Shown: piece after piece, positions 30,299-53,502 of the stretch
Layout of the letters: each line of letters opens with the position of its first letter
Numbering within the stretch: the stretch's first letter is position 1
IMG/VR virus record: IMGVR_UViG_3300008117_000011
Coordinates: 159,672 to 223,671 of that record
Length of the DNA stretch: 64,000 nt
Strand: one strand, 5' to 3'
Position numbers and translations under genes: made by a program
The notes under the pieces: generated by a model
The model's database searches: none
What the model saw: the letters and a program-made list of their open reading frames with translations, nothing else
Told to the model about the DNA's origin: nothing

Positions 30299-31276
30299 TT
30301 ATGTGTATTTTAAATATTCATTAACACCAATCTTTAAATATGTGTCTTGATCAACTAATATTGGATTTATTAACATTATTTGTGGGGTTGGTGAAGGTGT
30401 TGGTGTTGGGGTTGGTGAAGATGTGGGTGTTGGTGTGGGTGTTGGGTAATTTTCATAAACCTCAAAATATAAATTTGGTGGGTAAACCACAAAATCACCA
30501 AACGAATCTATTTTAGTTAATATGTTAAAATCTTCATTAATTATTACTTCTGTATTACCAATAGTTTCCCCAATAGGAATTGTAACACCAGTCATTATTG
30601 TTATTGGACTTCCACTTGTTCCTAAATTATGAGTAAAACTCATACTTATTTCCTCACCATATGTTTGATTTGATGTTAAGTTATAATTAATAACAATAGA
30701 TCCTGGTGCTATATCAACATCTAATATAACCGTTAATGGTGTATTTGTAGTTGTCGTTGTTGTAACTGGTGCTTCTGTAGTCGTCGTTGTTGTAACTGGT
30801 GGACACGGTGGACAAGTAGGACAAGGTGTTGGCGTTGGTGGAATTGGTTTTTTTGTTGTTGCGCAACAAGGGAATCCAGTTTCATAACAACCATCTCCAG
30901 GTTCTAAGTCATCAGCAATAAAACTTTCTTGAACGTTTATAAACAATTTTTCTCTAATTGGTAGAATTAACGTTCCATCGCTGGATATAAAAATAAATTG
31001 ACCTTCAAATCTACCAACTTTTCTAGTATCAAACTTCCTAAATTGATAATAAACATAATATTCTGGTTCGGCATTTGGGTCAAGCATTGTCTTTGCAACA
31101 ATGCCAGCTGGACGTGTGGTAATTTTTGGAACCCCAGTCTCAACATCAACCATAGAAAAAAATATGGCAGATTGTTCTATTAAATCCATCATATTATTAT
31201 AATCGCTACGACCATCCTTTACGACTTGCATTTTAAGTAAAGGGAGTGAAGAGTTCTTTTTAATGAAAAATTCCAT
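30299..31276 (-). CDS. Virion protein, BppU-like N-terminus with Thr-run and (PT)n linkers
   Basis: FFIKKNSSLPLLKM..YYVYYQF..DT..GRFEGQF; PVTTTTTT x2; PTPTPTPT. Confidence 0.55.
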   Translation of the reverse strand: MEFFIKKNSSLPLLKMQVVKDGRSDYNNMMDLIEQSAIFFSMVDVETGVPKITTRPAGIVAKTMLDPNAEPEYYVYYQFRKFDTRKVGRFEGQFIFISSDGTLILPIREKLFINVQESFIADDLEPGDGCYETGFPCCATTKKPIPPTPTPCPTCPPCPPVTTTTTTEAPVTTTTTTNTPLTVILDVDIAPGSIVINYNLTSNQTYGEEISMSFTHNLGTSGSPITIMTGVTIPIGETIGNTEVIINEDFNILTKIDSFGDFVVYPPNLYFEVYENYPTPTPTPTSSPTPTPTPSPTPQIMLINPILVDQDTYLKIGVNEYLKYT

Positions 31277-31303
31277 CTATAGTTTTTACTATAAATATAT
31301 GAA

Positions 31304-32938
31304 TTAACATTCTTTTCTTAATTCTGCTGGATAAAAATCAAAACGATTATGTTCGGTTGGTGTTATAAGAAGAAGTCCAGGATTTAATTTACCTTTAACT
31401 AAATTTTGAAAGTTATGGGACATTAAAGTTTGTTCATAAGGATTGTCAAATTTTGTCTCAATATAACATTTGTAATTACCTTCTTTTGATAAGACAATTG
31501 GCCAATTAGAAAGATAGATTTCCCCACTAGCGTAGGGGATACCATTTAATGATTTTATATTTTTAAATTCTAGACTTGGGGCGCTTGGATCATAACCAAC
31601 AACTGGTAGATTTGGTTTTTCCGGCCAATGATTTTCTCTGAAACTTTGGGGTGTATTGTACCAAGCCCATTGTGTTGTGTGACTTCCGAAAAATTCAGTA
31701 AAATTTAATTTTAAAAAATCAAAATTTTCTTTTTTAATTATTTGTAATGACGTACTATATAAATTTTTTACTTTTCTATTAAAACCATTTTTACAAACAT
31801 CACAATCTTTAGTAACAAAAGCCATATCGTCCTCAAAGAAATAGTAATAACCCAAATCGTCTTGTTGATTAAAGTGTTCGGCAATAAATTGTCTACCACC
31901 GGTAATACCTATATTATCTTTTTTAATATGTTCAAAACCATATTGTGAACAAAGATTTAAATATTCTTTTGTTGTTGTTAAATCCGTTGAGTTATCCAGT
32001 AAAAATTTTTTTGTTTTTGTTATAAAATCTATATCGTACTCTAACATTGATTCAATTAAAGTTTCAAATTGTTTTGGTGAGTTAAACGTAATAACATATA
32101 GACCAACATCATTACCTTCTTTTTTTACTTTATTATTTTTAATATTTTCAAAAAACGTATATAATAAACCATCAGAATTAATAAGGTAATTATCAATTAA
32201 ATTTGGGTGTAAATAACTCATAATCGTAAAGATACTTTCTTCTGTTCCCATTAAATTATTATTTAATGTATGTGTAAGTAAACTATAATATATTGTGTTT
32301 AAATCGCTAATATATTTTTTAGGACCACCAAAAAAACCACCCCTACTTACATAGTTTGTTTTTGTTTTTGCATACTCACATAACTTATCGTATGAAAATC
32401 CGTGAACCTCTGTGTTTGCCTCATATGGAAAAGATATAAATAAAAACTTATCGTATTTTTTATTTATTTTCTCAAGAACATTATCATTTGTGAAATATCC
32501 TGGACTTACTGTGTTTGAGATTCCAGCGTCAATCCAGAATAGTTTTTCAGAATTAAATTTATCTAAAATTACAGCATCGTGCAGTAAAAACATTTTAGAC
32601 ATTACAATTGGATTATACATCTCAAGTTTTGCTTGTGTTGATTCTTTTAACCAACCAACTTGATTGTACCAATTTTCATTTGTTCTTATTTTTTGTATTT
32701 TGTCAAAAAATTCATTATTTCTAAACCAAGAAAGGTCCCGGATAATAAATTGTGTTTTTGACATATCCCTTCTTTCACTAACAAATTTATAAAGAGATTC
32801 GTCCCCAAAAATTATGAGATTACAATCAATTTTTAATAAATCATCAAATTTATTTAAATAGTAATCAAAAGACCTATTCCATCCTTTTTCTAAATTACCC
32901 CTACCAATATCCCATAATCCGGTAACAAGTGTCATCAT
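31304..32938 (-). CDS. HtrL/YibB-like glycosyltransferase fused to a second GT-A-like domain
   Basis: TLVTGLWDIGR, MSKMFLL, FWIDAG, GGFFGG, GTEESI; second domain YYFFEDD. Confidence 0.7.
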   Translation of the reverse strand: MMTLVTGLWDIGRGNLEKGWNRSFDYYLNKFDDLLKIDCNLIIFGDESLYKFVSERRDMSKTQFIIRDLSWFRNNEFFDKIQKIRTNENWYNQVGWLKESTQAKLEMYNPIVMSKMFLLHDAVILDKFNSEKLFWIDAGISNTVSPGYFTNDNVLEKINKKYDKFLFISFPYEANTEVHGFSYDKLCEYAKTKTNYVSRGGFFGGPKKYISDLNTIYYSLLTHTLNNNLMGTEESIFTIMSYLHPNLIDNYLINSDGLLYTFFENIKNNKVKKEGNDVGLYVITFNSPKQFETLIESMLEYDIDFITKTKKFLLDNSTDLTTTKEYLNLCSQYGFEHIKKDNIGITGGRQFIAEHFNQQDDLGYYYFFEDDMAFVTKDCDVCKNGFNRKVKNLYSTSLQIIKKENFDFLKLNFTEFFGSHTTQWAWYNTPQSFRENHWPEKPNLPVVGYDPSAPSLEFKNIKSLNGIPYASGEIYLSNWPIVLSKEGNYKCYIETKFDNPYEQTLMSHNFQNLVKGKLNPGLLLITPTEHNRFDFYPAELRKEC

Positions 32939-34182
32939 AAATTACCAACTATTCTTTCTCCCCAACCTTTTGATGCCGAGTGTGGCCATACAACCCAATA
33001 CGCTGGTTTTTCTGAGGTGTTAAATTCTCTCCATATTTTTCCGTAACCATCTGGATCATTTTTTATTCTATTAATTTCATCTGGTTGTGCGTCTTGCCTA
33101 AATAGGGTTTCATCATTTTTATTATGAAACGCAACAACAAAGAAATTATAATCTGTTTCCGGAACCTTATCTAATGGCAAATCAATACAATGTTTGAATA
33201 TTGTAAAGAAACTTTTTTCCCAATCCTCTTCTGTTGAAAAATCGTATGGGTTTGGTGGATACTTTTTATCTAATGTATATTGTTGTACTGACCTATTTGA
33301 AAACTTTATTCCGGCGTACTTTTCATAGTCCTTAATTGTTCTTTCAGAACCAAATCCATACTTACCAAGGTCTTCTTCATATTTCTCATTATCAATACCA
33401 AGTATCTTTCTATTCTTTTCGTGTGATGAATTATTTTTCTTCCACCATTCTTTATTGTCATCCCATTGTTTTGTTCTGTTCTTTCTGGTGTACTCGTGCC
33501 AGATAACAACTTTATGTGGGTGAAACAAATCATATCCGTGAGTAAATGCCCTAACGGCAATTGATATTTCTTCTCCGTGAAAATAATAATCCGGGTCGTG
33601 CTGAACTTCCGTTGAGAATTGTCCTAACGTGAAACAAAAATGTGCCGAGTAAAATCTAGCCCTTAATGGTTTTTTAATTTTTTGCCACCCTGGGATTACC
33701 TCTGGTAGAAAAAATACAACTCCTTCCGGTGTGAATCTATCAAAGGCCATTCTCCAAGGTTCACCAACTCTACCAGCCGGGTCGTTGTCCGGATCAAAAG
33801 ATGAAACATAACCTGTAAGTAATGGTTTTTTAACTCCATCTTTTTGTAATCCTTGTAACATTCTGATTAAGATTTGATCCCAGTTTTTCTCAAAACGCAT
33901 GTGGGAATCAACTTGAAGAGTATACTCTTCTCCTTTATATAATTGTTGTACCTGGTTTCTAGCCCAACAAACACCTGTTGATTCTGAATATAAGACATCT
34001 AAAATTCTAAATCTTTCATCATCTTTATATTCCGATAAATCATCAAAACCATCTTCTGGATGATACTGACGACAAATACCAAAAACTAAATTTTCTGGGT
34101 GTTTTGCGTTTGATAAACAATCTTTAACTGTTGGGATAAGTTGGGGGTCTCTATATGATGCAATTTGTATAAAAATCTTCAT
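32935..34182 (-). CDS. GT60-family polypeptide GlcNAc transferase (Skp1 Gnt1-like)
   Basis: IFIQIASYRD, GVCWAR, LQVDSHMRF..WD, FHGEE, RAFTHGYD, WHEY. Confidence 0.8.
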   Translation of the reverse strand: MKIFIQIASYRDPQLIPTVKDCLSNAKHPENLVFGICRQYHPEDGFDDLSEYKDDERFRILDVLYSESTGVCWARNQVQQLYKGEEYTLQVDSHMRFEKNWDQILIRMLQGLQKDGVKKPLLTGYVSSFDPDNDPAGRVGEPWRMAFDRFTPEGVVFFLPEVIPGWQKIKKPLRARFYSAHFCFTLGQFSTEVQHDPDYYFHGEEISIAVRAFTHGYDLFHPHKVVIWHEYTRKNRTKQWDDNKEWWKKNNSSHEKNRKILGIDNEKYEEDLGKYGFGSERTIKDYEKYAGIKFSNRSVQQYTLDKKYPPNPYDFSTEEDWEKSFFTIFKHCIDLPLDKVPETDYNFFVVAFHNKNDETLFRQDAQPDEINRIKNDPDGYGKIWREFNTSEKPAYWVVWPHSASKGWGERIVGNL

Positions 34183-34281
34183 ATAGAAAAATTAACGATT
34201 TTTTATTTTAAATAAATAATATTCAAAACCTAATTCTATATATTTCTACTAATGTTTTACTATTTTTTTCATAACAATTAA

Positions 34282-36414
34282 TTGATAACTTTAATGAAAA
34301 AATTAATGATAATAACACCCCATTTGTCAACAGGGGGTCAACCACAATTCTTATTAAAAAAGATTGAATTATTAAAAGATACGTACGACTTATACTGTGT
34401 TGAATATAACTTTGTGTCTCCAGATTTTGTTGTACAAAGAAATAAAATAAAAAATTTATTAATACTTAATTTTATCTCATTAGAAGAAAATGAATTGAGA
34501 TTGACAAATGTTATTAAGGATATAAATCCAGATATAATTTGGTTTGAGGAGTTACCAGAAACGTTTATAACAAACGAAGAATGTGAGTACATTTATAAAA
34601 AAGAAAGAAGTTGGCAAATAATTGAAACGACCCATTCCTCCCAAGATTTAAGTTTTAAAAAAAGATACGCTCCGGATAAATTTATTTTTGTATCCGATTT
34701 ATCAGTTAAACAATACGACAATTTAGGAATTGAATCTTCAGTAATTCAATACCCAGTAAACAAGAAAACAAAAAATACTGACAACTTTAAAAGTAAGTTA
34801 TCATTTGATAATGAGTATAAACATATTGTAATTGTTGGGTTATTTACCCAGGGTAAAAATCAATCGTATGCTTTTGATATTGCAAGAAAATTAGAAAAAG
34901 AAAAAGTATTATTTCACTTTGTTGGTAATACTGCAATCAATTTTAAAGACTACTGGGAACCACTACTTTTAAATAAACCTAAAAATTGTATACTACACGG
35001 AGAAAAAGAAAATATTGATGATTATTTACAAGCTTCTGATTTATTTTTATTTCCCTCAAAATTTGAATTAAATCCTTTGGTTGTTAAAGAAGCTCTTTGT
35101 TATGATGAGTTACCTATTGTTATGTTTAATTTAGAATCATATTGTGGTCAGTATGATAATGAACCTAACATTAGTTTTATGAAAAATGACATTAATATTG
35201 ATTCAAAACTAATTAAAGAATTACTTTTTGGTAAAACCAAGACCTATCAAGATATTGAGGGTTGGTTTTCATATGAAGAACTATACAATAAATTTGTAAA
35301 CGAATGTTCTGATGGAAGTACAATTGTTGAAATTGGTAGTTGGTTTGGTAAATCAACAAAATACATTTCAGATAAAATAAAAGAAACAAATAAAAATGTT
35401 AAGTTAATTTCTGTTGATACTTTTAAAGGGTCTCAAAATGAGCAACTCCATATAGATACTGTTGGTAATTTTGATAATGACATATATCAAATTTTCTATG
35501 AAAATTTAATTGGTAATAAAATAGAAGTAATAAAAGACTCTTCACATAACGCTTCTAAATTATTTAACAATGGGTCCATTGATTATCTAATGATTGATGG
35601 GGATCATAGTTATGAAGGTGTTAAAAATGATATTGAAGATTTTTTCTACAAAGTTAAACCGGGTGGTATTATTTCAGGTGATGATTATGTAGTCTTTGAT
35701 GGTGTAACAAAAGCTGTAAATGAGTATTTTAATGGGACTCAAAATATAACAACAAACGGATATAACTGGTATTATAAAATACCTAAAATTCAAGTAATTC
35801 ATATTTCAACATTACCTAAGCAAAAAAGGGCTATAAAATCAATTACAAATATAAAAGAGTTAAAGAGATACAACATTGATATTAAGTTTATTGAGAATTA
35901 TGTATATGATGGTGAAGTTGATGTATCAACCCACAGATATCCAGAAAGTCAAAATATAAATAAGGGTCACTATGGTTGTTATTTAGCACACAAAGAGGCA
36001 ATACATTCAATTGATAATGACTATGACTATACAATTATAATGGAGGAGGACGCTTACATTTTTGAGAATCTTAATGATTTTGTTGATATAGTTCATAAAG
36101 CCATTTTTAATTGTATTAAAGATGAAATATACTTTGTATCATTTGGTGGATTAATTTTAGATTACGCACTAAACGAATATGATAATTTATTTAATGAGTG
36201 TTGGCATCAAACTATGGCTCATTGTTATATGATACCAAACAAGTATAAACAATGGTACGTTGATAAATTTGAGACTAGCCCTTGGGATTCGGCAGATCTT
36301 TGGTTTAACCATATTTTTTGTCACGATAGAAAATTAAGATTAATAACCAAAAAATTCTATAGTAAACAACTAGATGGTACCTCACTTATTGATAATGTAA
36401 AAAAAGAATATTGA
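34282..36414 (+). CDS. Multidomain GT4 glycosyltransferase + class I methyltransferase + GT25-like domain
   Basis: GKNQ, DLFLFPSKFELNPLVVKEA (GT4); VEIGSWFGKS, IDGDHSYE, GGIISGDDY (methyltransferase); GCYLAH, IMEEDA (GT25-like). Confidence 0.8.
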   Translation: MITLMKKLMIITPHLSTGGQPQFLLKKIELLKDTYDLYCVEYNFVSPDFVVQRNKIKNLLILNFISLEENELRLTNVIKDINPDIIWFEELPETFITNEECEYIYKKERSWQIIETTHSSQDLSFKKRYAPDKFIFVSDLSVKQYDNLGIESSVIQYPVNKKTKNTDNFKSKLSFDNEYKHIVIVGLFTQGKNQSYAFDIARKLEKEKVLFHFVGNTAINFKDYWEPLLLNKPKNCILHGEKENIDDYLQASDLFLFPSKFELNPLVVKEALCYDELPIVMFNLESYCGQYDNEPNISFMKNDINIDSKLIKELLFGKTKTYQDIEGWFSYEELYNKFVNECSDGSTIVEIGSWFGKSTKYISDKIKETNKNVKLISVDTFKGSQNEQLHIDTVGNFDNDIYQIFYENLIGNKIEVIKDSSHNASKLFNNGSIDYLMIDGDHSYEGVKNDIEDFFYKVKPGGIISGDDYVVFDGVTKAVNEYFNGTQNITTNGYNWYYKIPKIQVIHISTLPKQKRAIKSITNIKELKRYNIDIKFIENYVYDGEVDVSTHRYPESQNINKGHYGCYLAHKEAIHSIDNDYDYTIIMEEDAYIFENLNDFVDIVHKAIFNCIKDEIYFVSFGGLILDYALNEYDNLFNECWHQTMAHCYMIPNKYKQWYVDKFETSPWDSADLWFNHIFCHDRKLRLITKKFYSKQLDGTSLIDNVKKEY

Positions 36415-36415
36415 T

Positions 36416-41500: not shown

Positions 41501-41869
41501 ACCATCAATTCCAGAGGTCCCAGAGGTTCCGTCAATCCCTGATGTACCAGAAGTGCCGTCTATACCAGAGGTTCCGTCTACCCCACTAGTGCCAGATGTA
41601 CCATCAATACCTGATGTTCCAGAAGTACCATCAACACCAGAAGTACCAGAAGTTCCGTCTATACCAGAGGTCCCAGAGGTGCCTGCGGTTCCAGAAGTTC
41701 CACTTGAACCAAAAGTTGTTGATATATAGTTTGCAACTTGATCTATTGTTGCCTTATATGAAGAACCCCCTGAATATTGTATTGTATCACCGGTATTTAC
41801 GATGTGAATTAATGTATCACCAGTTATATATGGGGCAATTGTTCTATCTGTTAATCTTTGTTGTGACAT
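38502..41869 (-). CDS. Gly-Thr-Ser collagen-like fibre protein (~1121 aa if repaired), frame broken at 41401-41404
   Basis: ORF 41360..41869 leaves the GTS frame at a CCCC run; the other frame continues through the repeat into SGASVIINNNVNDYVVTATG..GEANLIF..FNEVGDANSDFRIESD and ORF 38502..39203; removing 2 nt gives 1122 codons. Confidence 0.8.
39645..41710 (-). repeat. ~2.06 kb coding Gly-X-Y repeat (GTS, GSS, GIN, GVN, GID, GVD, GTA, GTR), about 230 triplets
   Basis: 9 nt periodicity (gttccagaa / gtaccacta variants) with synonymous divergence. Confidence 0.92.
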
Positions 41870-45174: not shown

Positions 45175-45201
45175 AACCTTTTTAATTTAAATATTTTAAT
45201 G

Positions 45202-48153
45202 TTACATTTGTAACCAAGTTCCTGTTCCTGTATTAAATAATATAATTGCACCTCCATCGGCATCTAATATTAGTGTTTGTGTGTTTTCAACTCCAATAAT
45301 TGTGTCTGTACCATTTGCAATAAATGTTATATTATTAATATATGAGTTTAACCCAATGTCTTTAACATCATACCTTAATCTACCAGATGTAACAGAATTA
45401 GGTAAATAAATTGTAGTTGCTGATATTGAAGAGTCAACACCAATAACATTGTCGGTTGTAAGGGCTGAATATGTGGCGCCGCTAACATAGGTGTAGTTAT
45501 TTCCAATAGTATTAACATTTCTATACTCAACCACACCAGTTGTTTCATTTCTCCCTAAAATTTGTGTTAAATTGTTATTAAGGTTTGGTATATCTGATAT
45601 TGTAATGGTGTTAGCGGTAAACCCATTTTGTACAACTGTTCCACCAGTAACAATTAAATCACCATCATATACTAAATCACCAACAACAACGACATCCCCC
45701 ACAACATCTAAATTACCATTAATACAAGTATTTCCTGTTACAGATAAAGTACACCCTGTTGTGTGTCCAGAAATATTGAATGACCCAATTTGGTTTGTGT
45801 TTCCTGTTACATTATAGTTACCAATCTGTGTTGTATTACCAGAAATTGTATAATTACCATTTAATGTTTTTGTATATTCCCAATATCCTTGTGATGAATT
45901 ATATGATATTAAATCACCATTTGTTTGACCACTAGTTTGAACATTGTGTAAATCACCTAAGTTATATCCTAATGATGGTCTGACAAATAGTGAACCATTA
46001 ACAGCAGCATCAATAACAATAGCCATTTGGATTTTAAGGTTTGGTTCAGTAGGTTCAAAACTAGTTAACCCACCAGGTATTGTTGGACTTACATAAAGTA
46101 TCGTACCATCAACCCAGGTTTCACCATATAGTGAACCTGTAGTGTTTACCCCCCTAATTAAGCCAAATTCATAAACATAACCATCTTCACCATTTAATAT
46201 GTTTTCCCCAGCAATACCTAATGTAAAATAGTATGGAATAGTACCATCTGCAATCATATACTCACCAAGTATTCTACCACTAGTACCAAGAGTACCAGAC
46301 GCTCTGACAACCCTACCTTTATTTATTGTCGCACCACTTTGGTTTTTAATATAATATAGATTGTCTAAACCAACTTTAAGGCTTACGTTATTTCCTTCTA
46401 AATCAACATCAAGTGTTCCATAATCAACATCCCAATGAAGCCTACCTTCTTGTACTGTTGGTACGTATGCGGTATTAAAATCAATGTAATTTGTATATAC
46501 TGATGTTGCGGATAATGAATTAAATTTTGAATCCCCCGATGCGGTAATCCAAGCAGTTTCAACACCCGCATTGTTCTCAACGATAATATTTTTATCATTA
46601 TCATTTCCAGTACCACCTTTAAATTGAACCCCCCCTAATATTGAATTTGTTGTAATTTCAGGTGATGTTGAATTATTATATGCTTGTTGTAAATTTGTTG
46701 TGGATGTTCCACCAAACTTAGACGCAAAAAAGAATTTAGCCTTAGTTTCGTCAGTTAAATCAGTTGCCGTACTTAATACAGATAAAACACCTATAAGAAC
46801 AGCATCGGTACTTAAATTAGGGAATGATATAAATGATTCATTTTGTAATGCTGAAATTGCTAATGCTAGTGTATTGTAATTTTGTTGACCATACATTACC
46901 ACAACTGAACCATCTTGTTGTAAGTAAATTCTTTGATTTGTTGCCTTTGTTCCTGTTATTGGTGTAATAACACCACCAAGGTCATAATTTAAAGGGTCAA
47001 TATCTGTTACATCTGTCAATGTCGCCCCTGTTTGTGTTCTATATTGAAATGTTCTAGGGTTTTCTCCTGTAACGTAAATAGTGTTTGGACTTAAAGTATT
47101 ATTTGCAAAATTAATACCTAACCCATATAGATAGCCAGCACTTGTATTAAACTTTAAATTAGCCCCATTTGTTGATGGTAGTATACCTCCATTAATTAAA
47201 TTAATAGGTGTGAACATATCTCGTAATTGACCCAATGGGGATAAAACAAAATCAGGTTGACTAAATACTGAATAAATTGATGTTTTATCTGGGTGGCTTA
47301 ATTTACCTAAAAATATATTTTGTCTTCTTTGTTGTTCCGATAAAGGTGTTGATTGTTGTGATATTGTACCACCACTATTTAAAAAAACAAATGTTTCAGT
47401 GGAAGTGTTAACAAAATTATCTGTGTTTACCCCACCACTATAAGATAAATAATATATTTGTGGACTTAAAGGGTTTGATGTGTCATCAACAATCCACCCT
47501 TTAACTGGTGATACATAAAATGTTGTTGTTGATGCTGTTGTAATACCTGTAAATTCAAACACACCTGTTGATGAGTTTACCGTAGATATATTATATCCTA
47601 AAGCTACCCAATCAGAACCATTACTAACCAATTGTAACGCATTTGTTTCACCAAGTATCACAAATGGTTTATCATCTATTGTTTCTGAACCAAAAGGTTG
47701 TACTGTTACAGCGCCTCCTCCATTATTTTTAATATTATATAATTTACCTTGTACACCTACCGCAGTTGGTAAATATATTGTAAAAGTTCCACCAGAAGCA
47801 TCTATCATAAAATCTTCTGTTTGTGCTGTATACGTTGAATTAATTGTCTTCTGTGGAAATATAATACCACCAGTTGATGTAATACCACTAGTTTGTGTTA
47901 AACCACTAACAAATAATGTATCGGCTGATAGACCATTTGTAAAAATTGTAGGACCGTAAACAGTTCCTCCGGATAATGTTGATAATCTATCCCACCCTAT
48001 TGGGAGTATTTGATTTGCTGTTGATCCTGATGTATATAAAATTGCATCAGCTGTATTAAGTGCTAATTCACCAGATGTTAGTCCACTTGCGGGTGGAACT
48101 TTTCCTGGGACATTAGACCTTTTAATAAGGAATGTCGTTTGTCTATTTGCCAT
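45202..48153 (-). CDS. Tail fibre-like protein, 983 aa
   Basis: N-terminal IKRSNVPGKVP..LTSGELALNTAD fibre motif; TNLQQAY; GNLDVVGD-type repeats; two IYLP..IK..TI..W modules. Confidence 0.65.
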   Translation of the reverse strand: MANRQTTFLIKRSNVPGKVPPASGLTSGELALNTADAILYTSGSTANQILPIGWDRLSTLSGGTVYGPTIFTNGLSADTLFVSGLTQTSGITSTGGIIFPQKTINSTYTAQTEDFMIDASGGTFTIYLPTAVGVQGKLYNIKNNGGGAVTVQPFGSETIDDKPFVILGETNALQLVSNGSDWVALGYNISTVNSSTGVFEFTGITTASTTTFYVSPVKGWIVDDTSNPLSPQIYYLSYSGGVNTDNFVNTSTETFVFLNSGGTISQQSTPLSEQQRRQNIFLGKLSHPDKTSIYSVFSQPDFVLSPLGQLRDMFTPINLINGGILPSTNGANLKFNTSAGYLYGLGINFANNTLSPNTIYVTGENPRTFQYRTQTGATLTDVTDIDPLNYDLGGVITPITGTKATNQRIYLQQDGSVVVMYGQQNYNTLALAISALQNESFISFPNLSTDAVLIGVLSVLSTATDLTDETKAKFFFASKFGGTSTTNLQQAYNNSTSPEITTNSILGGVQFKGGTGNDNDKNIIVENNAGVETAWITASGDSKFNSLSATSVYTNYIDFNTAYVPTVQEGRLHWDVDYGTLDVDLEGNNVSLKVGLDNLYYIKNQSGATINKGRVVRASGTLGTSGRILGEYMIADGTIPYYFTLGIAGENILNGEDGYVYEFGLIRGVNTTGSLYGETWVDGTILYVSPTIPGGLTSFEPTEPNLKIQMAIVIDAAVNGSLFVRPSLGYNLGDLHNVQTSGQTNGDLISYNSSQGYWEYTKTLNGNYTISGNTTQIGNYNVTGNTNQIGSFNISGHTTGCTLSVTGNTCINGNLDVVGDVVVVGDLVYDGDLIVTGGTVVQNGFTANTITISDIPNLNNNLTQILGRNETTGVVEYRNVNTIGNNYTYVSGATYSALTTDNVIGVDSSISATTIYLPNSVTSGRLRYDVKDIGLNSYINNITFIANGTDTIIGVENTQTLILDADGGAIILFNTGTGTWLQM

Positions 48154-48304: not shown

Positions 48305-49987
48305 TTAGTAGCTGCCCCCATCTAAAACATCAAATTCGGCCAAGACTCTAACCCCATTAAATGAACCATCATCAGTAGGGTCTGTACTTCTAATTACAAT
48401 GTCATTTAATTGTGTAACCCAACCTCTATTTGGATATCCAGTAAGAGCAGTATATTCTGTAACACTTGGTACCTCTGTTCCGGTAAGACCTGTAAGGTTT
48501 TGCATTCTTACAATATCAAAATTAACATCACCAGCCGCAATACCATTACCGTCTTGGATTGTAAATCCGGCGTTAACAGATGTTGCAATTGTTGATCCAG
48601 TTGGGTTATAGTTTAATGTAATGTTTGGGTCTTCTACGTAAAGGTTGCTTGTAAATGCTGATATTGCAGCTCCAAGTACCGTTAAGTCACCTTGGATTAC
48701 AACATTACCTGCGGCATCAATGTTATCAACACTTAAAGTATTTGTTCCGTCATTGTATGTGAATGTTGATTCATCTGTTAGTAATCCTCCAGGTCCAACA
48801 TAAACAACTCTTCCCTGTGTAAGGTTTGAGAAACTTAAACCAGAAACTGTGTTGATTGACGCAACCAAATCTGGTTGTCCTTCATTTTGAGAAATTGTGA
48901 AAGTATTTGTTGTTGGACTATATGTAAAACCTGTAACATATGTATCGTTAATATCAATACCAGATAAACTAACGCTATACACAACACCATCATTTCTTGT
49001 AAAGTCTAAAGCTTCAGTTCCAGAGTTGTATGTTCCACCAGTTGTATAAACGTTTGTATATGGTAATGTGTATGTACCAGGAGCAACGTCTTGATTATAT
49101 AACAATCCAATTGACGCTGTACTAGTATTATCGGTAGCAGCCGTATTTGTACCACCGGTAACATAAGTGTCGTTTGTGTCAATAGTGCTTAAATCAACAG
49201 TATATGATGTACTATCATTTTTAACAAAAGTAATTAATTTATTACCATTGTTGTATGTACCACCAGTTGTAAATGTATCTTGTGTTGTGATAAAATAAGG
49301 GCCACCTATAGGTGTGCCGTGATAATCTAACTGAGCTGATTGTGTCGGTGTATCGTTAGTTGACGGAGTTAAAGTATTTCCAGTAACATAAACATCATTT
49401 GTTTGACTAAAAGCTGTAAGCGATCCATAATTTACAATCTCTAATGAGCTTGATCCAGTTGCGGTTGTGTTATAAAGTCCAGTACCAGTAATTGTTAAAT
49501 TATTAACAACTTCAGTTCCGGTTACATTTAAATTACCATTAATTGTAAGAGCTGTAAAAGAATCAATTGTTACTGGAACAGCTGGCTTACCATTATTTAG
49601 TTCAATTGTTAGTACATTTGGTGACCAAGTAGCTCCAGTTGTATATGAGTCAACAGATGCCGCAATGTCCGTTATATCTGCCAACACAAAACCAGATGTT
49701 GTACCAGAAAGGAATTTACCAACAAGCCCAGAACCAGTTTGGTCTTGATATTTTGTGATTTGATTTCTTAATCTTAAATCATAGAGATTAGAACCAACCT
49801 CAAAAAAGTTTGCTGTAGTACCTGTTCCTGCCGGAGTCCATTCTGCTGTTGATGTTGTAAATCCTGAGAAAAATACAATACCATCTGCGGTATTAACAAT
49901 TGGTTCACCTTTTAATAGACTACTAGGTAATGGTCTATTAACTATATCTGAATTTTTTAAAACGTGTGTTGTGTTTCTTATTGCCAT
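48305..49987 (-). CDS. Tail fibre-like protein, 560 aa
   Basis: LLKGEPIVNTADG N-terminus; repeated DTYVTGGT / TTGGTY units; GDLTVLG..VEDPNITLN; ends LDGGSY. Confidence 0.65.
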   Translation of the reverse strand: MAIRNTTHVLKNSDIVNRPLPSSLLKGEPIVNTADGIVFFSGFTTSTAEWTPAGTGTTANFFEVGSNLYDLRLRNQITKYQDQTGSGLVGKFLSGTTSGFVLADITDIAASVDSYTTGATWSPNVLTIELNNGKPAVPVTIDSFTALTINGNLNVTGTEVVNNLTITGTGLYNTTATGSSSLEIVNYGSLTAFSQTNDVYVTGNTLTPSTNDTPTQSAQLDYHGTPIGGPYFITTQDTFTTGGTYNNGNKLITFVKNDSTSYTVDLSTIDTNDTYVTGGTNTAATDNTSTASIGLLYNQDVAPGTYTLPYTNVYTTGGTYNSGTEALDFTRNDGVVYSVSLSGIDINDTYVTGFTYSPTTNTFTISQNEGQPDLVASINTVSGLSFSNLTQGRVVYVGPGGLLTDESTFTYNDGTNTLSVDNIDAAGNVVIQGDLTVLGAAISAFTSNLYVEDPNITLNYNPTGSTIATSVNAGFTIQDGNGIAAGDVNFDIVRMQNLTGLTGTEVPSVTEYTALTGYPNRGWVTQLNDIVIRSTDPTDDGSFNGVRVLAEFDVLDGGSY

Positions 49988-50018
49988 AACTTATTTTATT
50001 TAATAAATATTTACTTTT

Positions 50019-50597
50019 TTAAAAAGTCCCACCATTTAGTGTATCATTTTGTATAACTGAACTATTGGCTGTTATAATTCTTGAATTTCCTAAACTATCA
50101 AGACCTAAATCAACTTGTGGTGTATTAACTTTTGTGGTTGATGTCCATATACTAGAGGTTCCATTTACCGTGTTAATATCTCTAAAACGCTTAAGTGGTT
50201 TACCCAAATCAATTGTATTATCTGTTACTGGTGTTACATTATTATGAATTGTAATTCCTGTGTTACAACTATGAATATTTTCTACATATAATTCTGTAAT
50301 ACAGTTGCCACTACCACCAGAAAATTGTGATCCAGTATTAAATAAAGACCAGTCAGTTATTGTACCATTCCAAGGTGAAGGATTTAATTTATAGTATTGA
50401 GTTCCACCACTAACACCAACAACCATCCCAGCTCTTCTTCTTAAGTTAGGAATTGCGTTTAGTTCAGTTAAATTATTGACGTTTCTAAATCCGTCAATAC
50501 CATACAAGGGGTCAATTACCGGATATGTATCAAGCGGATCTGTAGGTGAGATAAACCCTACAATTTCAACTCCTCCGGAAAGACTAAAACTCATCAT
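50019..50597 (-). CDS. Fibre-related virion protein
   Basis: LNAIPNLRRRAGMVV; PVTDNTIDLG..KRF; ends LNGGTF. Confidence 0.55.
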   Translation of the reverse strand: MMSFSLSGGVEIVGFISPTDPLDTYPVIDPLYGIDGFRNVNNLTELNAIPNLRRRAGMVVGVSGGTQYYKLNPSPWNGTITDWSLFNTGSQFSGGSGNCITELYVENIHSCNTGITIHNNVTPVTDNTIDLGKPLKRFRDINTVNGTSSIWTSTTKVNTPQVDLGLDSLGNSRIITANSSVIQNDTLNGGTF

Positions 50598-50618
50598 AAT
50601 TTATTTTTCTTTTTTAAA

Positions 50619-51470
50619 TTAACTACACATCCAACTATAAATATTTCCGTTAAAGTTGAAGTATGTTCTGTATATGTTATATGTTACTGGGAATCCACCT
50701 CCATCAACAATTGTAATTTGTCCATTGAGTATTGTTGGAATCACAAATCCATTACATCCTGACAAACTATCTCTAAATTTAGAAGGTTGTGCAAGACTTG
50801 TAGGTATTAAAATATATCCATAACCAAGACCGACATTAAATTCAACATAGGTCTCCACGACAGGATTTCTAGCATCAAATGTAAGTGATGGTACATCTAC
50901 TAGTGTAATATTTGTTTTATTAACCTTACCATAATAAATACCGAGCTCAGCTGGTGTTGGGCTCTTTGTAGGTGTTGGTGTTGGTGTATTTGTAGGTGTA
51001 ACCGTTGGTGTAACACTTATTGTAGGTGTTGGTGTTGGTGTAAACGCAGATGGTAATGGCGTAATACAAATATCCCAAGTCGCCGTAGGAGTTGGTGTTG
51101 GTGTCGCAGTCGGTGTTGACGTAGGTGTTTTTGTAGGTGTCGGTGTAACACTTGACGTAGGTGTAGGTGTCGGTGTAACACTTGACGTAGGTGTAGGTGT
51201 CGGTGTAGGTGTTCTTGTTGGTGTTGGTGTAGGTGTAGGAGTTGGTGTAGGCCTAGGTACATTTAAAATATACGGACAATCATCATCTAATACCAATATT
51301 GTATACGTCCCATAAATTTCTTGAGGTGGAATTAAAAGTCCCGGTTCAAATGTTAATGGTAATACGACAATACCCAGATTTATAACATCAAGTGAGTTAT
51401 CTGGTTTAAAAAGAACTTGAGCTTCTTCCCCATCATTATAAACGCTATTTATTGTAATTGTTTGACTCAT
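50619..51470 (-). CDS. Virion protein with a long mucin-like (Pro-Thr)n linker
   Basis: About 100 residues of PT/TS repeat between two small globular domains. Confidence 0.6.
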
Positions 51471-51472
51471 CC

Positions 51473-53502
51473 TTATGGATTTGTTGTTGTAGTTGTTGTT
51501 ATATTATGTGTTGTTGTAGTTGTTGTATTATCATTTATTGTGTAAGTAAAATCATTTGGCTCACAGAAAGTTGTTGAGCAATCTGGACAGAATGGGTTAA
51601 ACATTTTAAATTTATCTTTAAGAACTTCAAAGTTGTGTCTAATCTCACTTGAATCAAGTGGTTCAACGTACATTCTAAATTGTGATATACCACCCTCAAA
51701 TGTTCCAGCAAATTCCTGTTCAAGAAGGATATCTGTTTTAAGACCAGAAAGTGATGACATATCAAGAACTGACGTTGGGAAAAGTTCAGGATCTTGGATA
51801 TAAGGGCCCGTAAGACCACTACAAGATTGTGGGATAAGATTTTCGTGAAGTCCTTGAGTTCCACCACCCCAAGAAACATTAAAAGGAACCCCAACTTGTT
51901 TTTCCTTATCAGTACTTAAAGCTCTTGGTATTATCTCTTCAAAATCTTTTATTGTGTAAATTAACTTACCATTAACATAAATGAGTAAAGTCCCATTTCT
52001 AAATTTCTTATCATCAAGCCATTTATCATTTAACTGAACAATATCAATTTTTTCTGGTTGTTTTTTATTTGTGTATGGTGGCTTAATAAGGGCTATTGTG
52101 TTATTTGCAAGTGACTCAAGATATACACTTTCTGTTATATCACCAAGTCCACCATCATACCACAAATGACAGTTATTAAGATTTGTATCTCTTTTCCACA
52201 CAACATCAAGTAAGAACCAATGTTCAAAATCTAGATAAGCCGGATTTTCTTTTTCACAGGTTGGGTAAATTGGAGGTGTACACCATTCTTGTATTGTATA
52301 CCCAGTCATATATGTATTTCCAGTAACACAAGTTCCAGTTGTCTCACAACCACCAGTGAATTTCAATACTTTTATTCCGATTCCCGGATTTTTTGGGTCA
52401 CCACATAATTTAAATGAGATGTTATTTGACATTACATCAAATAATGGATCTGACTCACAAGTATTTTCAATTGAGGTGAATCCAGTTGATGGGCAATCAA
52501 CACAATCAAGACAACCCTCACAAGTTGTACAAGTTGGTGTACAAGTTGTGGTTGGGGTATTACAAGTATCTACTGGAGTTGGTTCTGGTGTTGGTGTCGG
52601 TGTTGGTGTTATAATAGTCTCACAATTATGTGTTCTACACTCCCACCCACAAGTCTGACATCCATAATCGTTACACCCACAACCACAACTTATTGATTTT
52701 GTAAGATCTCCTTGACATGCATTGCACCCATAATTTAAATGTGGGTCGTGAATTCCATCAGCAGATCTTGGTGGATAAAGATATATACATCTACTATTTG
52801 TAATAGTTTGGTTACAGCAAGCACAAGTTTGTAAACAATTCGCAAGTGGTGTTGTAACTCTTGTGTATCCACTAAAACAATTTGGTGTACCATCTGCGTA
52901 GTGGTAAAATTTATTTTCAGCTCTAGCGCCTAAATAAAAAAATGTATTTTTGTTTTTTGGGTATAACTGATTTAATGTCGTTTCATTTGGTAATGGATTG
53001 TATTCATTTGTCAATCTTGGTTTCAAGACCATTTCAACAGCCCATCCTTTATTTACCCTTTCTGGAAAAATATCATAGTCGTACCCAAACTATCAAATTT
53101 TACAGAGTCGTTGAAAATTCCTTGGGTAAAATTAATTGTTTGATTGTCCATATTATCAACAAGCCCATTATCAATACCGGTAAATCCAATATCACAACTG
53201 CTTGATTCTGAAAAACAAGAAAGGTCTTTATCATCTGGGTTATAGTAATTTTGAGATACTATAACATTATTTGGATTAAATTGTTTGTAATTTAAATTTA
53301 TTTGTTGGCTTGTCTCCGAGTCATCTAAATCAAAATAAAACGGGACTTTATTTCCATATGTTTGTGCAATTATATATGGTGAAAACACAACCTCCTCATT
53401 ATAATCCCTCTCATCTGATGCCAATGACATATCCATACCGTCATAAATTAGGTTCAGATTAAATTTTTTATAACTATACTGGTTAATATTTTGGTATGCC
53501 AT
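51473..53502 (-). CDS. Cys-rich virion protein with a LamG/ConA-like C-terminus; reading frame broken near 53090
   Basis: The frame of 51473..53032 extends upstream as FGYDYDIFPERVNKGWAVEMVLKPR and overlaps the end of 53053..53502; LLIYVNG..FEGGISQFRMY..LDSSEIRHNF is LamG-like. Confidence 0.6.

What the first reader, a model, noticed from the sequence alone, without database searches (positions are those of the whole stretch)
30299..53502. Candidate phage-encoded virion protein O-glycosylation system: protein glycosyltransferases sit among their putative acceptor genes
Seen: four glycosyltransferase genes (31304-38233) interrupt the fibre block. They are flanked by virion proteins with extreme Ser/Thr tracts: about 230 GTS/GSS-type triplets, (PT)n tracts and Thr runs. 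Established: two of these enzymes belong to families that modify proteins rather than DNA or LPS, namely GT60 (Dictyostelium Skp1 GlcNAc transferase and trypanosome mucin-initiating enzymes) and TibC/Aah (Ser heptosylation of autotransporters). Inference: the phage initiates, extends (GT4, GT25-like, HtrL-like) and caps (two fused methyltransferases) glycans on its own fibres and sheath, giving a glycan coat that could affect stability, adhesion, grazing or protease resistance. I cannot tell whether this has been described for this clade.
Basis: partly seen in the sequence, partly recalled or inferred. Interest (0 to 1): 0.88.

Follow-up and report, generated by a model that had tools for sequence, protein, structure and literature searches.

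The report
Phage fibre glycosylation gene cluster
A large freshwater phage carries sugar-adding enzymes of protein-modifying families in its tail-fibre genes, next to a proline-free collagen-like fibre; this enzyme-fibre pairing recurs in many phages and some bacteria, so the fibre is probably sugar-coated, though no sugar has been measured.

Summary
Four genes at 31304-38233 encode five or six glycosyltransferase domains and two methyltransferase domains. They sit among tail-fibre and baseplate genes that carry PT tracts, Thr runs and 230 Gly-X-Y triplets.

- **Enzyme families.** 32935-34182 is GT60 (Pfam PF11397, 2.6e-69). 36416-38233 is a TibC/Aah-type O-heptosyltransferase fused to an FkbM methyltransferase. 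It scores 288 bits on TIGR04414 (cut-off 200) and 4e-56 to the TibC structure. The catalytic Asp and the four iron-finger Cys are conserved; Arg286 is not.
- **The "GTS triplets".** They form one proline-free collagen-like fibre gene (38502-41869, minus strand) with a TNF/C1q-like head. Its frameshift in the window is an assembly artefact.
- **New evidence.** TibC-like genes lie beside G-[T/S]-S collagen-like genes in many other phage contigs. The same holds in 18 of 30 bacterial loci with close homologues, including a two-gene island in Methylobacter luteus. It holds in only 1 of 25 loci with distant, autotransporter-type homologues. Some phages place HldE-like ADP-heptose genes next to the enzyme.
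- **Weaker link.** GT60 and the HtrL-like gene are core genes of the clade whether or not acceptor-like tracts are present.

No glycan has been measured. Virion glycosylation is already known in mycobacteriophages and was suggested for XacN1. I rate this a new variant of a known kind.

The parts
30299..31276 (-). 325-aa protein with two beta-sandwich domains joined by disordered Thr runs and a Pro-rich linker, plus a C-terminal PT tract. Probably a baseplate-attached decoration. Candidate mucin-like acceptor.
   Evidence: Thr runs at aa 161-177 and PT tracts at aa 277-293. AlphaFold model: residues 1-125 and 180-280 have pLDDT about 90, the linkers below 50. Weak Foldseek match to phage NF5 baseplate chain 9m8o_P, and a BppU_N lead. 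The N-domain is conserved next to HtrL/GT60 in 53 non-redundant groups, 31 of them with Thr/PT tails.
31304..32938 (-). 544-aa HtrL/YibB-like glycosyltransferase, probably two tandem GT-A-like domains.
   Evidence: Pfam HtrL_YibB 5.9e-22 for aa 2-249. The C-terminal half resembles viral WlaTC/HtrL/GT2 clusters by language-model features, score 0.97-0.98, a lead only. Both halves are conserved at 51-74% in relatives and 38-46% in XacN1/Xoo-sp13.
32935..34182 (-). 415-aa GT60-family glycosyltransferase; core gene of the phage clade.
   Evidence: Pfam PF11397, 2.6e-69. At least 133 IMG/VR loci at 64-79% identity. 44-49% identity in jumbo phages Xoo-sp13, XacN1, CM1 and RAS14.
34282..36414 (+). 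Three-part enzyme: GT4 glycosyltransferase, Methyltransf_24/TylF-like O-methyltransferase, and a weak GT25-like C-terminal domain. The likely true start is the ATG at 34294.
   Evidence: Pfam hits. First Met at codon 5. GT4 is fused directly to the TibC-like domain in many environmental homologues of about 727 aa.
36416..38233 (+). TibC/Aah-family (BAHT) protein O-heptosyltransferase domain (aa about 50-390) fused to an FkbM methyltransferase (aa about 426-560).
   Evidence: PDB TibC 4e-56. TIGR04414 287.9 bits against cut-off 200. D116, T232, K236, W307, C342, C345, C359 and C371 match TibC D110, T226, K230, W305 and the four iron-finger Cys, and are invariant in 12 homologues. TibC R286 is Val and P300 is Gly.
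38502..41869 (-). Collagen-like fibre gene: 53-aa N-terminal domain, 230 uninterrupted Pro-free Gly-X-Y triplets (mostly G-T-S, with G-I-N and G-V-D), a repeat shaft and a TNF/C1q-like head. In the window it is split into 41869-41360 and 41432-38502 by a frame break near 41402.
   Evidence: Translations. Pfam Collagen 8.4e-17. Intact 1163-aa ORF with 240/240 Gly in register in L005. Contigs of three other runs are net 2 nt shorter across the break. Head model pLDDT about 90, Foldseek prob 1.0 to TNF-like lectins. 4378 homologues of the C-terminal part.
41885..42190 (-). Small conserved 101-aa ORF upstream of the collagen-like gene. In relatives its homologue lies directly upstream of GT60.
   Evidence: tblastn hits at 35-60% in many GT60 loci.
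42217..48153 (-). Two fibre or virion structural genes of about 985 aa each (42217-45174 and 45202-48153), 21-22% Ser/Thr.
   Evidence: phrog_1645 virion structural protein 6.7e-34; phrog_16641 and phrog_5668 tail fiber 5.9e-19 and 1.1e-13.
48305..53502 (-). Further Ser/Thr-rich probable structural genes: 560 aa (25% S/T); 192 aa (weak tail-fibre match); 283 aa with about 100 residues of PT/TP tract; 519-aa Cys-rich protein with a PT tract and terminal Thr runs; 149 aa.
   Evidence: Composition and tracts. phrog_7121 at 1e-4 for 50019-50597. No family match for the others.
14116..17451 (-). Tail sheath (1111 aa) with an inserted Thr run and PT tracts at aa 289-320. Lies outside the finding's range.
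   Evidence: phrog_23 tail sheath 1.2e-53. Tracts.
56271..63957 (+). Second glycan-synthesis cluster. It has a weak GT4-like gene, three GT2-type genes (one with a GT7C-like part), GT11 and GT10 (fucosyltransferase families) and a SAM methyltransferase. A PolB-type exonuclease gene and a dUTPase gene interrupt it.
   Evidence: Pfam. In contig L139 the same families (GT2, GT25, GT11, GT10, methyltransferases, sulfotransferase) are contiguous with the TibC-like gene and a collagen-like gene.

Best explanation
The region is a protein-glycosylation module embedded in the tail-fibre and baseplate block of a roughly 224-kb freshwater myovirus-like phage.

**Accessory cassette (34282-38233).** It holds a GT4/methyltransferase/GT25-like enzyme and a TibC-like/FkbM enzyme. 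It sits between the collagen-like fibre gene and the core GT60 gene. Its most likely job is to O-glycosylate Ser/Thr of the 230-triplet proline-free (G-T/S-S)n stalk of that fibre in the cytoplasm before assembly. The proposed steps are:
1. The TibC-like domain adds the first sugar, most likely heptose from ADP-heptose.
2. The GT4 and other transferases extend the glycan.
3. The fused methyltransferases methylate it.

Glycosylation would hydrate and stabilise a collagen helix that has no proline or hydroxyproline. It would also change the fibre's surface.

**Core pair.** The GT60 and HtrL-like genes probably glycosylate another, still unidentified target. Thr-run/PT linkers such as those of 30299-31276 are candidates.

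**Shown:** family membership, conserved catalytic residues, gene adjacency and co-occurrence.
**Inferred:** donor sugar, acceptor, order of steps and effect on the fibre.
For: **Enzyme families**
- TibC/Aah membership: TIGR04414 287.9 bits against 200; TibC structure 4e-56. The catalytic Asp, three of four sugar-binding residues and all four iron-finger Cys are conserved.
- GT60: PF11397, 2.6e-69.

**Adjacency in phages**
- In 27 non-redundant viral locus groups with a collagen-like ORF, the repeat is always Pro-free G-[T/S]-S. The ORF lies beside the TibC-like or GT60 gene, often 50-110 nt away on the same strand.
- Among informative loci anchored on GT60 the counts are: TibC+/collagen+ 7, +/- 2, -/+ 6, -/- 33. 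The odds ratio is 19 and Fisher p is 6e-4, not corrected for phylogeny.
- L058 and L122 share an 87%-identical GT60-HtrL block. They differ by a swapped upstream cassette that carries collagen and TibC together.
- Five of five further contigs, chosen only for length, show the same pairing.

**Adjacency in bacteria**
- Of 30 loci with homologues at 44% identity or more, 18 have such a collagen-like ORF within 500 nt. Of 25 loci with more distant homologues, including enterobacterial TibC/Aah-type ones, only 1 does.
- In Methylobacter luteus the pair is a two-gene island among housekeeping genes. This arrangement parallels what I recall of the tibC-tibA and aah-aidA enzyme-substrate gene pairs.

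**Donor sugar**
- In L141 and L136 the TibC-like gene is followed by genes whose best NCBIfam matches are the two HldE domains: heptose-7-P kinase 2e-36 and heptose-1-P adenylyltransferase 2.5e-25.

**Fibre nature**
- TNF/C1q-like head and neighbouring tail-fibre PHROG matches.

**Experimental precedent**
- XacN1 carries GT60-like and HtrL-like homologues next to its baseplate genes. It showed at least two Schiff-positive virion bands.
Against: - No glycan has been measured for this phage or any close relative.
- TibC Arg286 is a sugar-binding residue whose Ala mutant abolishes or largely diminishes activity. It is Val here and variable in the environmental clade, so the donor may not be ADP-heptose.
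- No HldE-like gene was found in the 64-kb window.
- Known TibC substrates are beta-helical autotransporters, not collagen.
- The phylogenetically paired test within the clade is underpowered: 4 pairs the same way, 0 opposite, 1 unchanged, p = 0.125.
- Twelve non-redundant TibC-anchored viral groups lack a collagen-like ORF. Eight of them are a 35-38% subfamily; in the two loci inspected (L042, L048) the gene sits directly upstream of a sheath gene.
- GT60/HtrL occur without any nearby acceptor-like tract in many relatives.
- Ser/Thr-rich linkers and fibres are common in phages with no known glycosylation.
Confidence: 0.55

Rival explanations
1. The enzymes do not modify virion proteins. They remodel host envelope glycans (LPS core, capsule, S-layer or other host proteins) during infection, for example to block superinfection, or they make a free polysaccharide.
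For: HtrL/YibB, GT25, GT9, GT4, GT2 and FkbM families are typical of LPS and O-antigen clusters. GT60/HtrL are conserved regardless of nearby acceptor-like tracts. The second cluster (GT2, GT11, GT10) resembles an oligosaccharide or O-antigen-type pathway.
Against: The GT9 domain is TibC/Aah-type, not LPS-type: 288 bits against 23 bits. The cassette sits inside the fibre block and co-varies with a collagen-like gene. The same pairing exists as an isolated two-gene island in bacteria. No flippase, polymerase or undecaprenyl-phosphate-priming transferase was seen among the scanned ORFs of the window.
Confidence: 0.15
2. Adjacency has no functional meaning. The fibre region is a mosaic hot spot where accessory genes accumulate. 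The Ser/Thr repeats are unmodified, with PT tracts serving as plain linkers and the G-T-S stalk stabilised by hydration alone.
For: The region upstream of GT60 is clearly a swapped cassette between close relatives. Ser/Thr-rich fibres are common. Six clade members have a collagen-like gene without a TibC-like gene within 10 kb. The paired test gives p = 0.125.
Against: The pairing recurs in unrelated phage lineages that share no other window gene. It also recurs in bacterial chromosomes outside any phage context and at sub-500-nt spacing. It is specific to one TibC subfamily, 18 of 30 against 1 of 25.
Confidence: 0.15
3. The enzymes glycosylate virion proteins, but the main acceptor is not the collagen-like stalk. 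It could be the sheath insertion, the beta-structured fibres (closer to TibC's known beta-helix substrates) or the PT/Thr linkers.
For: A 35-38% TibC-like subfamily was found with a sheath homologue in the same locus, and in L042 and L048 it sits directly upstream of the sheath gene. In L140 the gene lies between a sheath gene and an Mtd_N fibre gene. In L025 a GT4-TibC fusion is followed by a 676-aa protein with 25% Ser/Thr and no collagen repeat. The window's sheath carries Thr/PT tracts.
Against: L140 also has a 354-triplet collagen-like ORF 3 kb away. The closest homologues pair with collagen-like genes, in bacteria as two-gene modules with no other candidate acceptor.
Confidence: 0.1
4. 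The glycosyltransferases hypermodify phage DNA.
For: Phage glycosyltransferases that build glycans on DNA are known (cited in PMC12619734). The second cluster lies beside dUTPase and exonuclease genes.
Against: To my knowledge, GT60 and TibC/Aah families have only protein acceptors among characterised members. No base-hydroxymethylase was seen among the scanned ORFs. This does not explain the association with collagen-like genes.
Confidence: 0.05

Closest known systems
TibC-TibA and Aah-AIDA-I (bacterial autotransporter heptosyltransferases, BAHT; PMC4358343)
   Same: Same enzyme family: TIGR04414 above cut-off, catalytic Asp, Thr/Lys/Trp sugar contacts, and the four-Cys iron finger. The enzyme gene lies next to a highly repetitive Ser-rich gene that is the presumed substrate. 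The enzymes act in the cytoplasm.
   Different: The neighbour is a proline-free collagen-like protein or phage fibre, not a beta-helical autotransporter. Arg286 is replaced. The enzyme is fused to an FkbM methyltransferase (elsewhere to GT4). It belongs to a distinct subfamily, 44-72% identical among its members but only about 34% to the enterobacterial loci found in the genome scan.
BclA-type glycosylated collagen-like exosporium filaments of Bacillus and Clostridioides (PMC8968730)
   Same: A collagen-like Gly-X-Y stalk rich in Thr, with a trimeric C1q/TNF-like head. Glycosylation is thought to aid hydration and stability of a helix without hydroxyproline.
   Different: BclA repeats contain Pro (GPT), and from memory it uses unrelated rhamnose-type glycosyltransferases. 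Here the repeat is G-T-S with no Pro at all, the enzyme family is BAHT, and the setting is a phage virion.
Mycobacteriophage virion glycosylation (Freeman et al. 2023, cited in PMC12619734 and PMC12582341)
   Same: Phage-encoded glycosyltransferases O-glycosylate the phage's own structural proteins.
   Different: There the acceptors are C-terminal tails of capsid and tail-tube subunits in small actinophages. Here the candidates are a collagen-like fibre and PT/Thr linkers, in a huge phage whose enzymes suggest a Gram-negative-type host. To my knowledge the enzyme families also differ; the original paper was not held.
Xanthomonas jumbo phage XacN1 and Xoo-sp13 (PMC5852040)
   Same: GT60-like (46-49% identity) and HtrL-like (41%) homologues plus a GT9 gene lie next to baseplate and giant structural genes. 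At least two Schiff-positive virion bands were seen, and the authors suggested that the phage enzymes make them.
   Different: No collagen-like gene and no TibC-type enzyme in the region examined; a carbamoyltransferase is present. The glycoproteins were not identified.
Giant-virus glycosylation machinery (chlorovirus capsid glycans; Mimivirus collagen modified by L230; PMC9614988, PMC8968730)
   Same: The virus encodes multi-domain glycosyltransferase/methyltransferase enzymes. Mimivirus glycosylates its own collagen-like proteins.
   Different: Those are eukaryotic viruses. Mimivirus glycosylates hydroxylysine. The enzyme families are different.

Membership tests
BAHT (TibC/Aah O-heptosyltransferases, TIGR04414) | Curated equivalog HMM score above cut-off, and better than LPS heptosyltransferase models | tested here: met
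   287.9 bits against cut-off 200; LPS heptosyltransferase I scores only 23 bits. phmmer to TibC structures gives 4e-56, and no other glycosyltransferase in the PDB is hit.
BAHT (TibC/Aah O-heptosyltransferases, TIGR04414) | Catalytic base Asp110 | tested here: met
   Aligned to D116, which is invariant in 12 homologues.
BAHT (TibC/Aah O-heptosyltransferases, TIGR04414) | Four sugar-binding residues Thr226, Lys230, Arg286, Trp305 | tested here: inconclusive
   T232, K236 and W307 are conserved and invariant. Arg286 aligns with Val and is not conserved in the environmental clade.
BAHT (TibC/Aah O-heptosyltransferases, TIGR04414) | Iron-finger motif of four Cys (339, 342, 358, 370) | tested here: met
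   C342, C345, C359 and C371 align and are invariant.
BAHT (TibC/Aah O-heptosyltransferases, TIGR04414) | Uses ADP-heptose and transfers heptose to Ser of a protein | not testable with these tools
   Indirect support only: split HldE-like kinase and adenylyltransferase genes follow the homologue in L141 and L136.
BAHT (TibC/Aah O-heptosyltransferases, TIGR04414) | Adjacent autotransporter substrate gene | tested here: not met
   No autotransporter is present. The neighbour is a collagen-like gene here and beside close homologues.
GT60 (Pfam PF11397) | Family HMM above the gathering score | tested here: met
   234.8 bits against 21, E = 2.6e-69. There is no sequence match to any solved structure.
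GT60 (Pfam PF11397) | Transfers GlcNAc to Thr/Ser or hydroxyproline of a protein | not testable with these tools
   Inferred from characterised eukaryotic members only (my knowledge). The acceptor is not identified by gene context.
Collagen-like triple-helix proteins (PF01391) | Long uninterrupted Gly-X-Y repeat | tested here: met
   230 triplets in the window. 240 of 240 Gly in register in the intact copy L005. Pfam Collagen 8.4e-17.
Collagen-like triple-helix proteins (PF01391) | Trimerising non-collagen domain and actual triple-helix formation | tested here: inconclusive
   The predicted C-terminal beta-sandwich matches trimeric TNF-like lectins at prob 1.0 and target-normalised TM about 0.5. 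Helix formation by a Pro-free G-T-S repeat cannot be tested here.
Phage virion glycosylation systems | Phage-encoded glycosyltransferases located among structural genes | tested here: met
Phage virion glycosylation systems | Glycans demonstrated on virion proteins | not testable with these tools
   The only available data are Schiff staining of virions of the distant relative XacN1.

The most novel reading that the evidence does not exclude
A large, undescribed class of O-glycosylated, proline-free collagen exists. A distinct subfamily of TibC-type heptosyltransferases has (G-T/S-S)n collagen-like proteins as its natural substrates. These proteins would be fibres of thousands of environmental huge phages and small surface proteins of methanotrophs, Polaromonas and other bacteria. 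Glycosylation would take the place of hydroxyproline in stabilising the triple helix. Some phages would bring their own ADP-heptose pathway to feed the reaction.
Probability: 0.4. Interest if true: 0.85.

Novelty: new variant of a known kind. Interest (0 to 1): 0.72.

Why it matters
If true, this extends virion glycosylation from small actinophages to abundant freshwater huge phages. It also gives the TibC/Aah family, known only as a modifier of virulence autotransporters, a second and far larger substrate class. The protein search found more than 5,600 homologues at E <= 1e-10, and only the first 8,000 candidates were scored.

It would explain how a 230-triplet collagen stalk with no proline can be stable. 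It would also give a glycan coat that may affect host recognition, protease resistance and grazing. It would show that phages import nucleotide-sugar pathways to decorate themselves.

The hypothesis is unusually easy to test. E. coli already makes the presumed donor, and a cultured bacterium, Methylobacter luteus, carries the minimal two-gene module.

Tried and rejected
- **Programmed -1 frameshift or pseudogene in the collagen-like gene: rejected.** Contigs from three other runs that cross 41395-41404 are net 2 nt shorter than the window: 11 nt left out and 9 put in (fully itemised for run X1). By my frame calculation this restores the frame. IMG/VR contig 3300031963_008173 has one intact 1163-aa ORF. 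The downstream frame has no start codon for 2.2 kb.
- **Plus-strand ORF 39625-41445 as a gene: rejected.** It is an antisense artefact of the repeat.
- **Near-identical DNA in isolated phages:** none found. PolB finds only 23-31% matches to Salinibacter and Nostoc phages.
- **Solved structures related by sequence** to the GT60, GT4/methyltransferase or HtrL proteins: none.
- **30299-31276 as the obligate GT60 acceptor: not supported.** 22 of 53 homologue groups have only the roughly 125-aa N-domain.
- **Paired phylogenetic test** of TibC against collagen within the clade: right direction but underpowered.
- **Assigning the window to the published 'moraphage' lineage (PMC12619734):** plausible by habitat, size and four core glycosyltransferase groups, but could not be checked.
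- **The Freeman 2023 paper** could not be read.
- **tRNA scan of the window:** none found.

Full report
**What the window is.** The window has about 30% G+C. It matches IMG/VR contig 3300008117_000011 (223,671 bp) at 100% protein identity for the two glycosyltransferases used as queries. Nearly identical sequence is held by about 20 public freshwater, lake and so-called fungus metagenome runs from many studies. No isolated phage is close at the DNA level. The family-B polymerase finds only 23-31% matches. PHROG matches identify a contractile-tail phage:
- sheath 14116-17451
- tube 12542-13030
- baseplate hub 11682-12446
- tail-fibre or virion proteins at 42217-45174 and 45202-48153.

**The observation.** It is correct. 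Between the polymerase side and the fibre genes lie four enzyme genes.
- 31304-32938(-) is HtrL/YibB-like (5.9e-22). Its C-terminal half looks like a second HtrL/GT-A domain; this is a language-model lead only.
- 32935-34182(-) is GT60 (PF11397, 2.6e-69).
- 34282-36414(+), probably starting at the ATG at 34294, has GT4 and Methyltransf_24 domains and a sub-threshold GT25 match.
- 36416-38233(+) has a GT9 domain and an FkbM methyltransferase.

The GT9 domain is specifically TibC/Aah-type. It matches the TibC structures at 4e-56, and no LPS heptosyltransferase structure is hit. It passes the NCBIfam equivalog model TIGR04414 at 287.9 bits against a cut-off of 200, while LPS heptosyltransferase I scores 23 bits.

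I read the alignment against the residues defined in the TibC structure paper (PMC4358343). The catalytic base Asp110 is conserved, as are Thr226, Lys230, Trp305 and all four iron-finger cysteines. All of these are invariant in 12 environmental homologues. Arg286 is Val, and the stereoselectivity residue Pro300 is Gly.

PT tracts and Thr runs are present in 30299-31276, 50619-51470, 51473-53032 and the sheath.

**The 'GTS triplets' are one collagen-like fibre gene.** On the minus strand, 41869-38502 encodes four parts:
- a 53-aa N-terminal domain
- 230 Gly-X-Y triplets with Gly at every third position, no proline and 317 Ser/Thr
- a shaft with a repeated motif of about 55 aa
- a C-terminal head.

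Pfam Collagen scores 8.4e-17 on the first piece. The C-terminal 352 residues have 4,378 homologues, many with the shaft motif repeated up to 18 times. With an 18-sequence alignment, residues 180-352 fold as a beta-sandwich at pLDDT about 90. Foldseek matches it at probability 1.0 and target-normalised TM about 0.5 to trimeric TNF-like lectins (PLTL, BC2L-C N-domain, Pgp3 C-domain). Matches to phage tip structures such as the phi812 spike knob and the Pan3 needle have lower TM, 0.20-0.36. The overall plan of collagen stalk plus TNF/C1q-like head is that of BclA and C1q.

**The frame break is an artefact.** In the window the gene changes frame near 41402, and the downstream frame has no start codon for 2.2 kb. 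Three observations argue against a real break:
- Logan contigs from three other runs run in from the unique N-terminal side at the phage's own depth. Across the site each is 2 nt shorter than the window; in run X1 this is 11 nt left out at 41395-41402 and 9 put in at 41363-41368. By my frame calculation a net loss of 2 nt restores the frame.
- Removing those 11 nt on paper gives a perfect ...S-G-T-N-G-T-S... continuation (from the sequence).
- Another IMG/VR assembly with identical enzyme genes has one intact 1163-aa ORF with 240 of 240 Gly in register.

I therefore reject a programmed frameshift or a pseudogene.

**Comparative evidence in viral contigs.**
- *Scope.* The GT60 gene has at least 133 relatives in IMG/VR at 64-79% identity, on contigs up to 322 kb. 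The block PolB, 30299-31276 homologue, HtrL-like and GT60 is conserved in almost all of them. The TibC-like gene has 52 viral loci.
- *Repeat type.* I scanned all loci for Gly-X-Y runs. In every one of 27 non-redundant groups that have such an ORF, X is Thr or Ser, Y is mostly Ser (then Asn or Asp), and Pro is absent. Repeat lengths reach 759 triplets.
- *Spacing.* The collagen-like gene lies beside a glycosyltransferase gene. It is 51-78 nt downstream of the TibC-like gene in L015, L018, L022 and L031. It is 90-111 nt upstream of GT60 in L109, L114-L117, L120 and L080. In the window the GT4/TibC cassette is inserted, inverted, exactly between the collagen-like gene and GT60.
- *Counts.* Among GT60-anchored groups with at least 8 kb of upstream sequence, the counts are TibC+/collagen+ 7, +/- 2 (the TibC gene is at the locus edge), -/+ 6 and -/- 33. 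The odds ratio is 19 and p is 6e-4, without phylogenetic correction.
- *Phylogeny.* On a GT60 tree, TibC presence changes at least 7 times. Independent pairs go the same way 4 times, the opposite way 0 times and show no change once, giving p = 0.125. This is the right direction but underpowered.
- *Cassette swap.* L058 and L122 are 87% identical over the block containing the small ORF, GT60, HtrL and the 30299-31276 homologue. Upstream they differ completely, and the collagen-like gene and the TibC/GT4 genes are present or absent together.
- *Extra contigs.* Five further contigs were chosen only for length from the protein search. All five have a G-[S/T]-S collagen-like ORF within a few kb of the TibC-like gene.

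**Comparative evidence in cellular genomes.** I scanned one genome per species.
- Among 30 loci whose TibC-like protein is at least 44% identical to the window's, 21 have a Pro-free Ser/Thr-rich collagen-like ORF, 18 of them within 500 nt.
- Among 25 loci with more distant homologues, including the enterobacterial TibC/Aah type at about 34%, the figures are 2 and 1.
- In the Methylobacter luteus IMV-B-3098 genome scaffold, the collagen-like gene (287 aa, Pfam Collagen 4.8e-8) and the TibC-like gene form a two-gene island. It sits between queA, mfd, miaB and phoH, which is not a prophage setting.

As I recall it, tibC-tibA and aah-aidA have this same layout, enzyme gene beside substrate gene. 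I take this as the strongest argument that the collagen-like protein is the substrate of this TibC subfamily.

**Donor sugar and pathway size.**
- In L141 the TibC-like gene is followed by a small cupin (weak sugar-isomerase similarity) and then two genes whose best NCBIfam matches are the two halves of HldE. These are heptose-1-phosphate adenylyltransferase (2.5e-25) and heptose-7-phosphate kinase (2e-36). Both are below the equivalog cut-offs but well ahead of the alternatives. L136 has the same cupin and the PfkB-type kinase, but no adenylyltransferase gene was called there. This supports ADP-heptose as the donor in at least part of the family.
- The loss of Arg286 leaves room for a different sugar in the window's enzyme. 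No HldE-like gene lies in the 64-kb window.
- GT4 is fused to the TibC-like domain in the commonest environmental architecture, about 727 aa. FkbM fusions also recur. This suggests that priming, extension and methylation are one pathway.
- The window holds a second cluster at 56271-63957 with GT2-type, GT11 and GT10 genes and a methyltransferase. In L139 the same families are contiguous with the TibC-like gene and a 147-triplet collagen-like gene. The two clusters may therefore build one glycan.

**The weaker half.** GT60 and the HtrL-like gene are core genes of the clade. The adjacent 30299-31276 protein models as two beta-sandwich domains (pLDDT about 90) joined by disordered Thr-run and Pro-rich linkers. 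Leads point weakly to a baseplate protein. As I recall, its Thr runs resemble the Thr-run acceptors of trypanosome GT60 enzymes. However, 22 of 53 homologue groups have only the N-domain of about 125 aa, while GT60 and HtrL persist. The GT60 acceptor is therefore not identified. Support for a virion target comes from XacN1. That phage has GT60-like (46%) and HtrL-like (41%) genes plus a GT9 gene next to baseplate genes and a 3313-aa protein with PT tracts. Its virions gave at least two Schiff-positive bands, and its authors already proposed that the phage enzymes make them.

**Mechanism proposed.**
- *Shown:* enzyme families, conserved catalytic residues, and adjacency and co-occurrence with collagen-like genes in phages and bacteria.
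- *Inferred:* the TibC-like domain adds heptose (or a related sugar) to Ser/Thr of the G-T-S stalk in the cytoplasm. GT4 and other transferases extend the glycan, and the fused methyltransferases cap it. The glycan hydrates and stabilises a helix that lacks proline and alters the fibre surface.

The stabilising role is by analogy with BclA (PMC8968730) and, from memory, with galactosyl-threonine collagen of vent worms.

**Rivals.** These are host-envelope remodelling, hitch-hiking without function, other virion acceptors such as the sheath (in L042 and L048 a 35-38% TibC-like gene lies directly upstream of a sheath gene) and DNA modification. Each is weighed in the Rival explanations section.

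**Novelty.** Phage-encoded virion glycosylation is known for mycobacteriophages (Freeman 2023, cited in PMC12619734 and PMC12582341) and was suggested for XacN1. A recent paper on freshwater 'moraphages' notes four core glycosyltransferase groups without resolving their targets. Whether the window belongs to that lineage could not be checked. I found no paper in the held library that links TibC-type enzymes to phages or to collagen-like proteins. The finding is therefore a new variant of a known kind. It has a specific, testable and apparently undescribed element: a collagen-associated subfamily of TibC-type glycosyltransferases.

Noticed in passing
window 56271-63957 (+): Second glycosyltransferase cluster: a weak GT4-like gene, three GT2-type genes (one with a GT7C-like part), GT11 and GT10 (fucosyltransferase families) and a SAM methyltransferase. 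A PolB-type exonuclease gene and a dUTPase gene interrupt it. With the first cluster this gives at least ten glycosyltransferase domains in 64 kb.
   Followed up: partly
L141 10183-11677 and L136 10174-11311: In L141 the TibC-like gene is followed by a cupin and split HldE-like genes. Their best NCBIfam matches are heptose-7-P kinase and heptose-1-P adenylyltransferase. L136 has the cupin and the kinase only. This suggests a phage-borne ADP-heptose pathway.
   Followed up: partly
L145 6935-9137 (Methylobacter luteus IMV-B-3098, NZ_KE386569.1): Two-gene island of a 287-aa Pro-free collagen-like protein and a TibC-like enzyme, flanked by queA, mfd, miaB and phoH. This is a cultured organism in which the pairing could be tested.
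   Followed up: partly
L042-L052; L140 4614-10103: A more distant TibC-like subfamily (35-38% identity) occurs in loci with a tail sheath homologue. In L042 and L048 it sits directly upstream of the sheath gene. In L140 a closer homologue lies between a sheath gene and an Mtd_N fibre gene.
   Followed up: partly
window 21138-23219 (+): 693-aa ORF whose residues 164-352 are a complete Fe/Mn superoxide dismutase (Sod_Fe_N and Sod_Fe_C). It is flanked by unannotated sequence, next to an SNF2-type helicase gene (19346-21106).
   Followed up: no
window 38505-41432 (-): The collagen region holds 47 N-x-[S/T] sequons, mostly from G-I-N-G-T-S. No N-glycosyltransferase family was detected, so this may be incidental.
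   Followed up: no
window 39625-41445 (+): A 606-aa ORF with G+C about 45% lies antisense to the collagen repeats. It is a by-product of the repeat composition, not a gene.
   Followed up: yes
window 1-3996 (-) and 4326-9437 (-): An open frame of at least 1332 aa runs off the window's start. It is followed by a 1703-aa ORF with only a sub-threshold OmpA-like match. These are probably giant structural proteins.
   Followed up: no
L058 vs L122, upstream of position 9734: Two phages are 87% identical over the GT60/HtrL block. They carry unrelated cassettes upstream, one with collagen, TibC and GT4 and one without, which marks a recombination boundary at the small conserved ORF.
   Followed up: partly
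window 51473-53032 (-): 519-aa protein with a very Cys-rich N-terminal third (many CxxC-like spacings), a PT tract and two terminal Thr runs. It has no family match.
   Followed up: no
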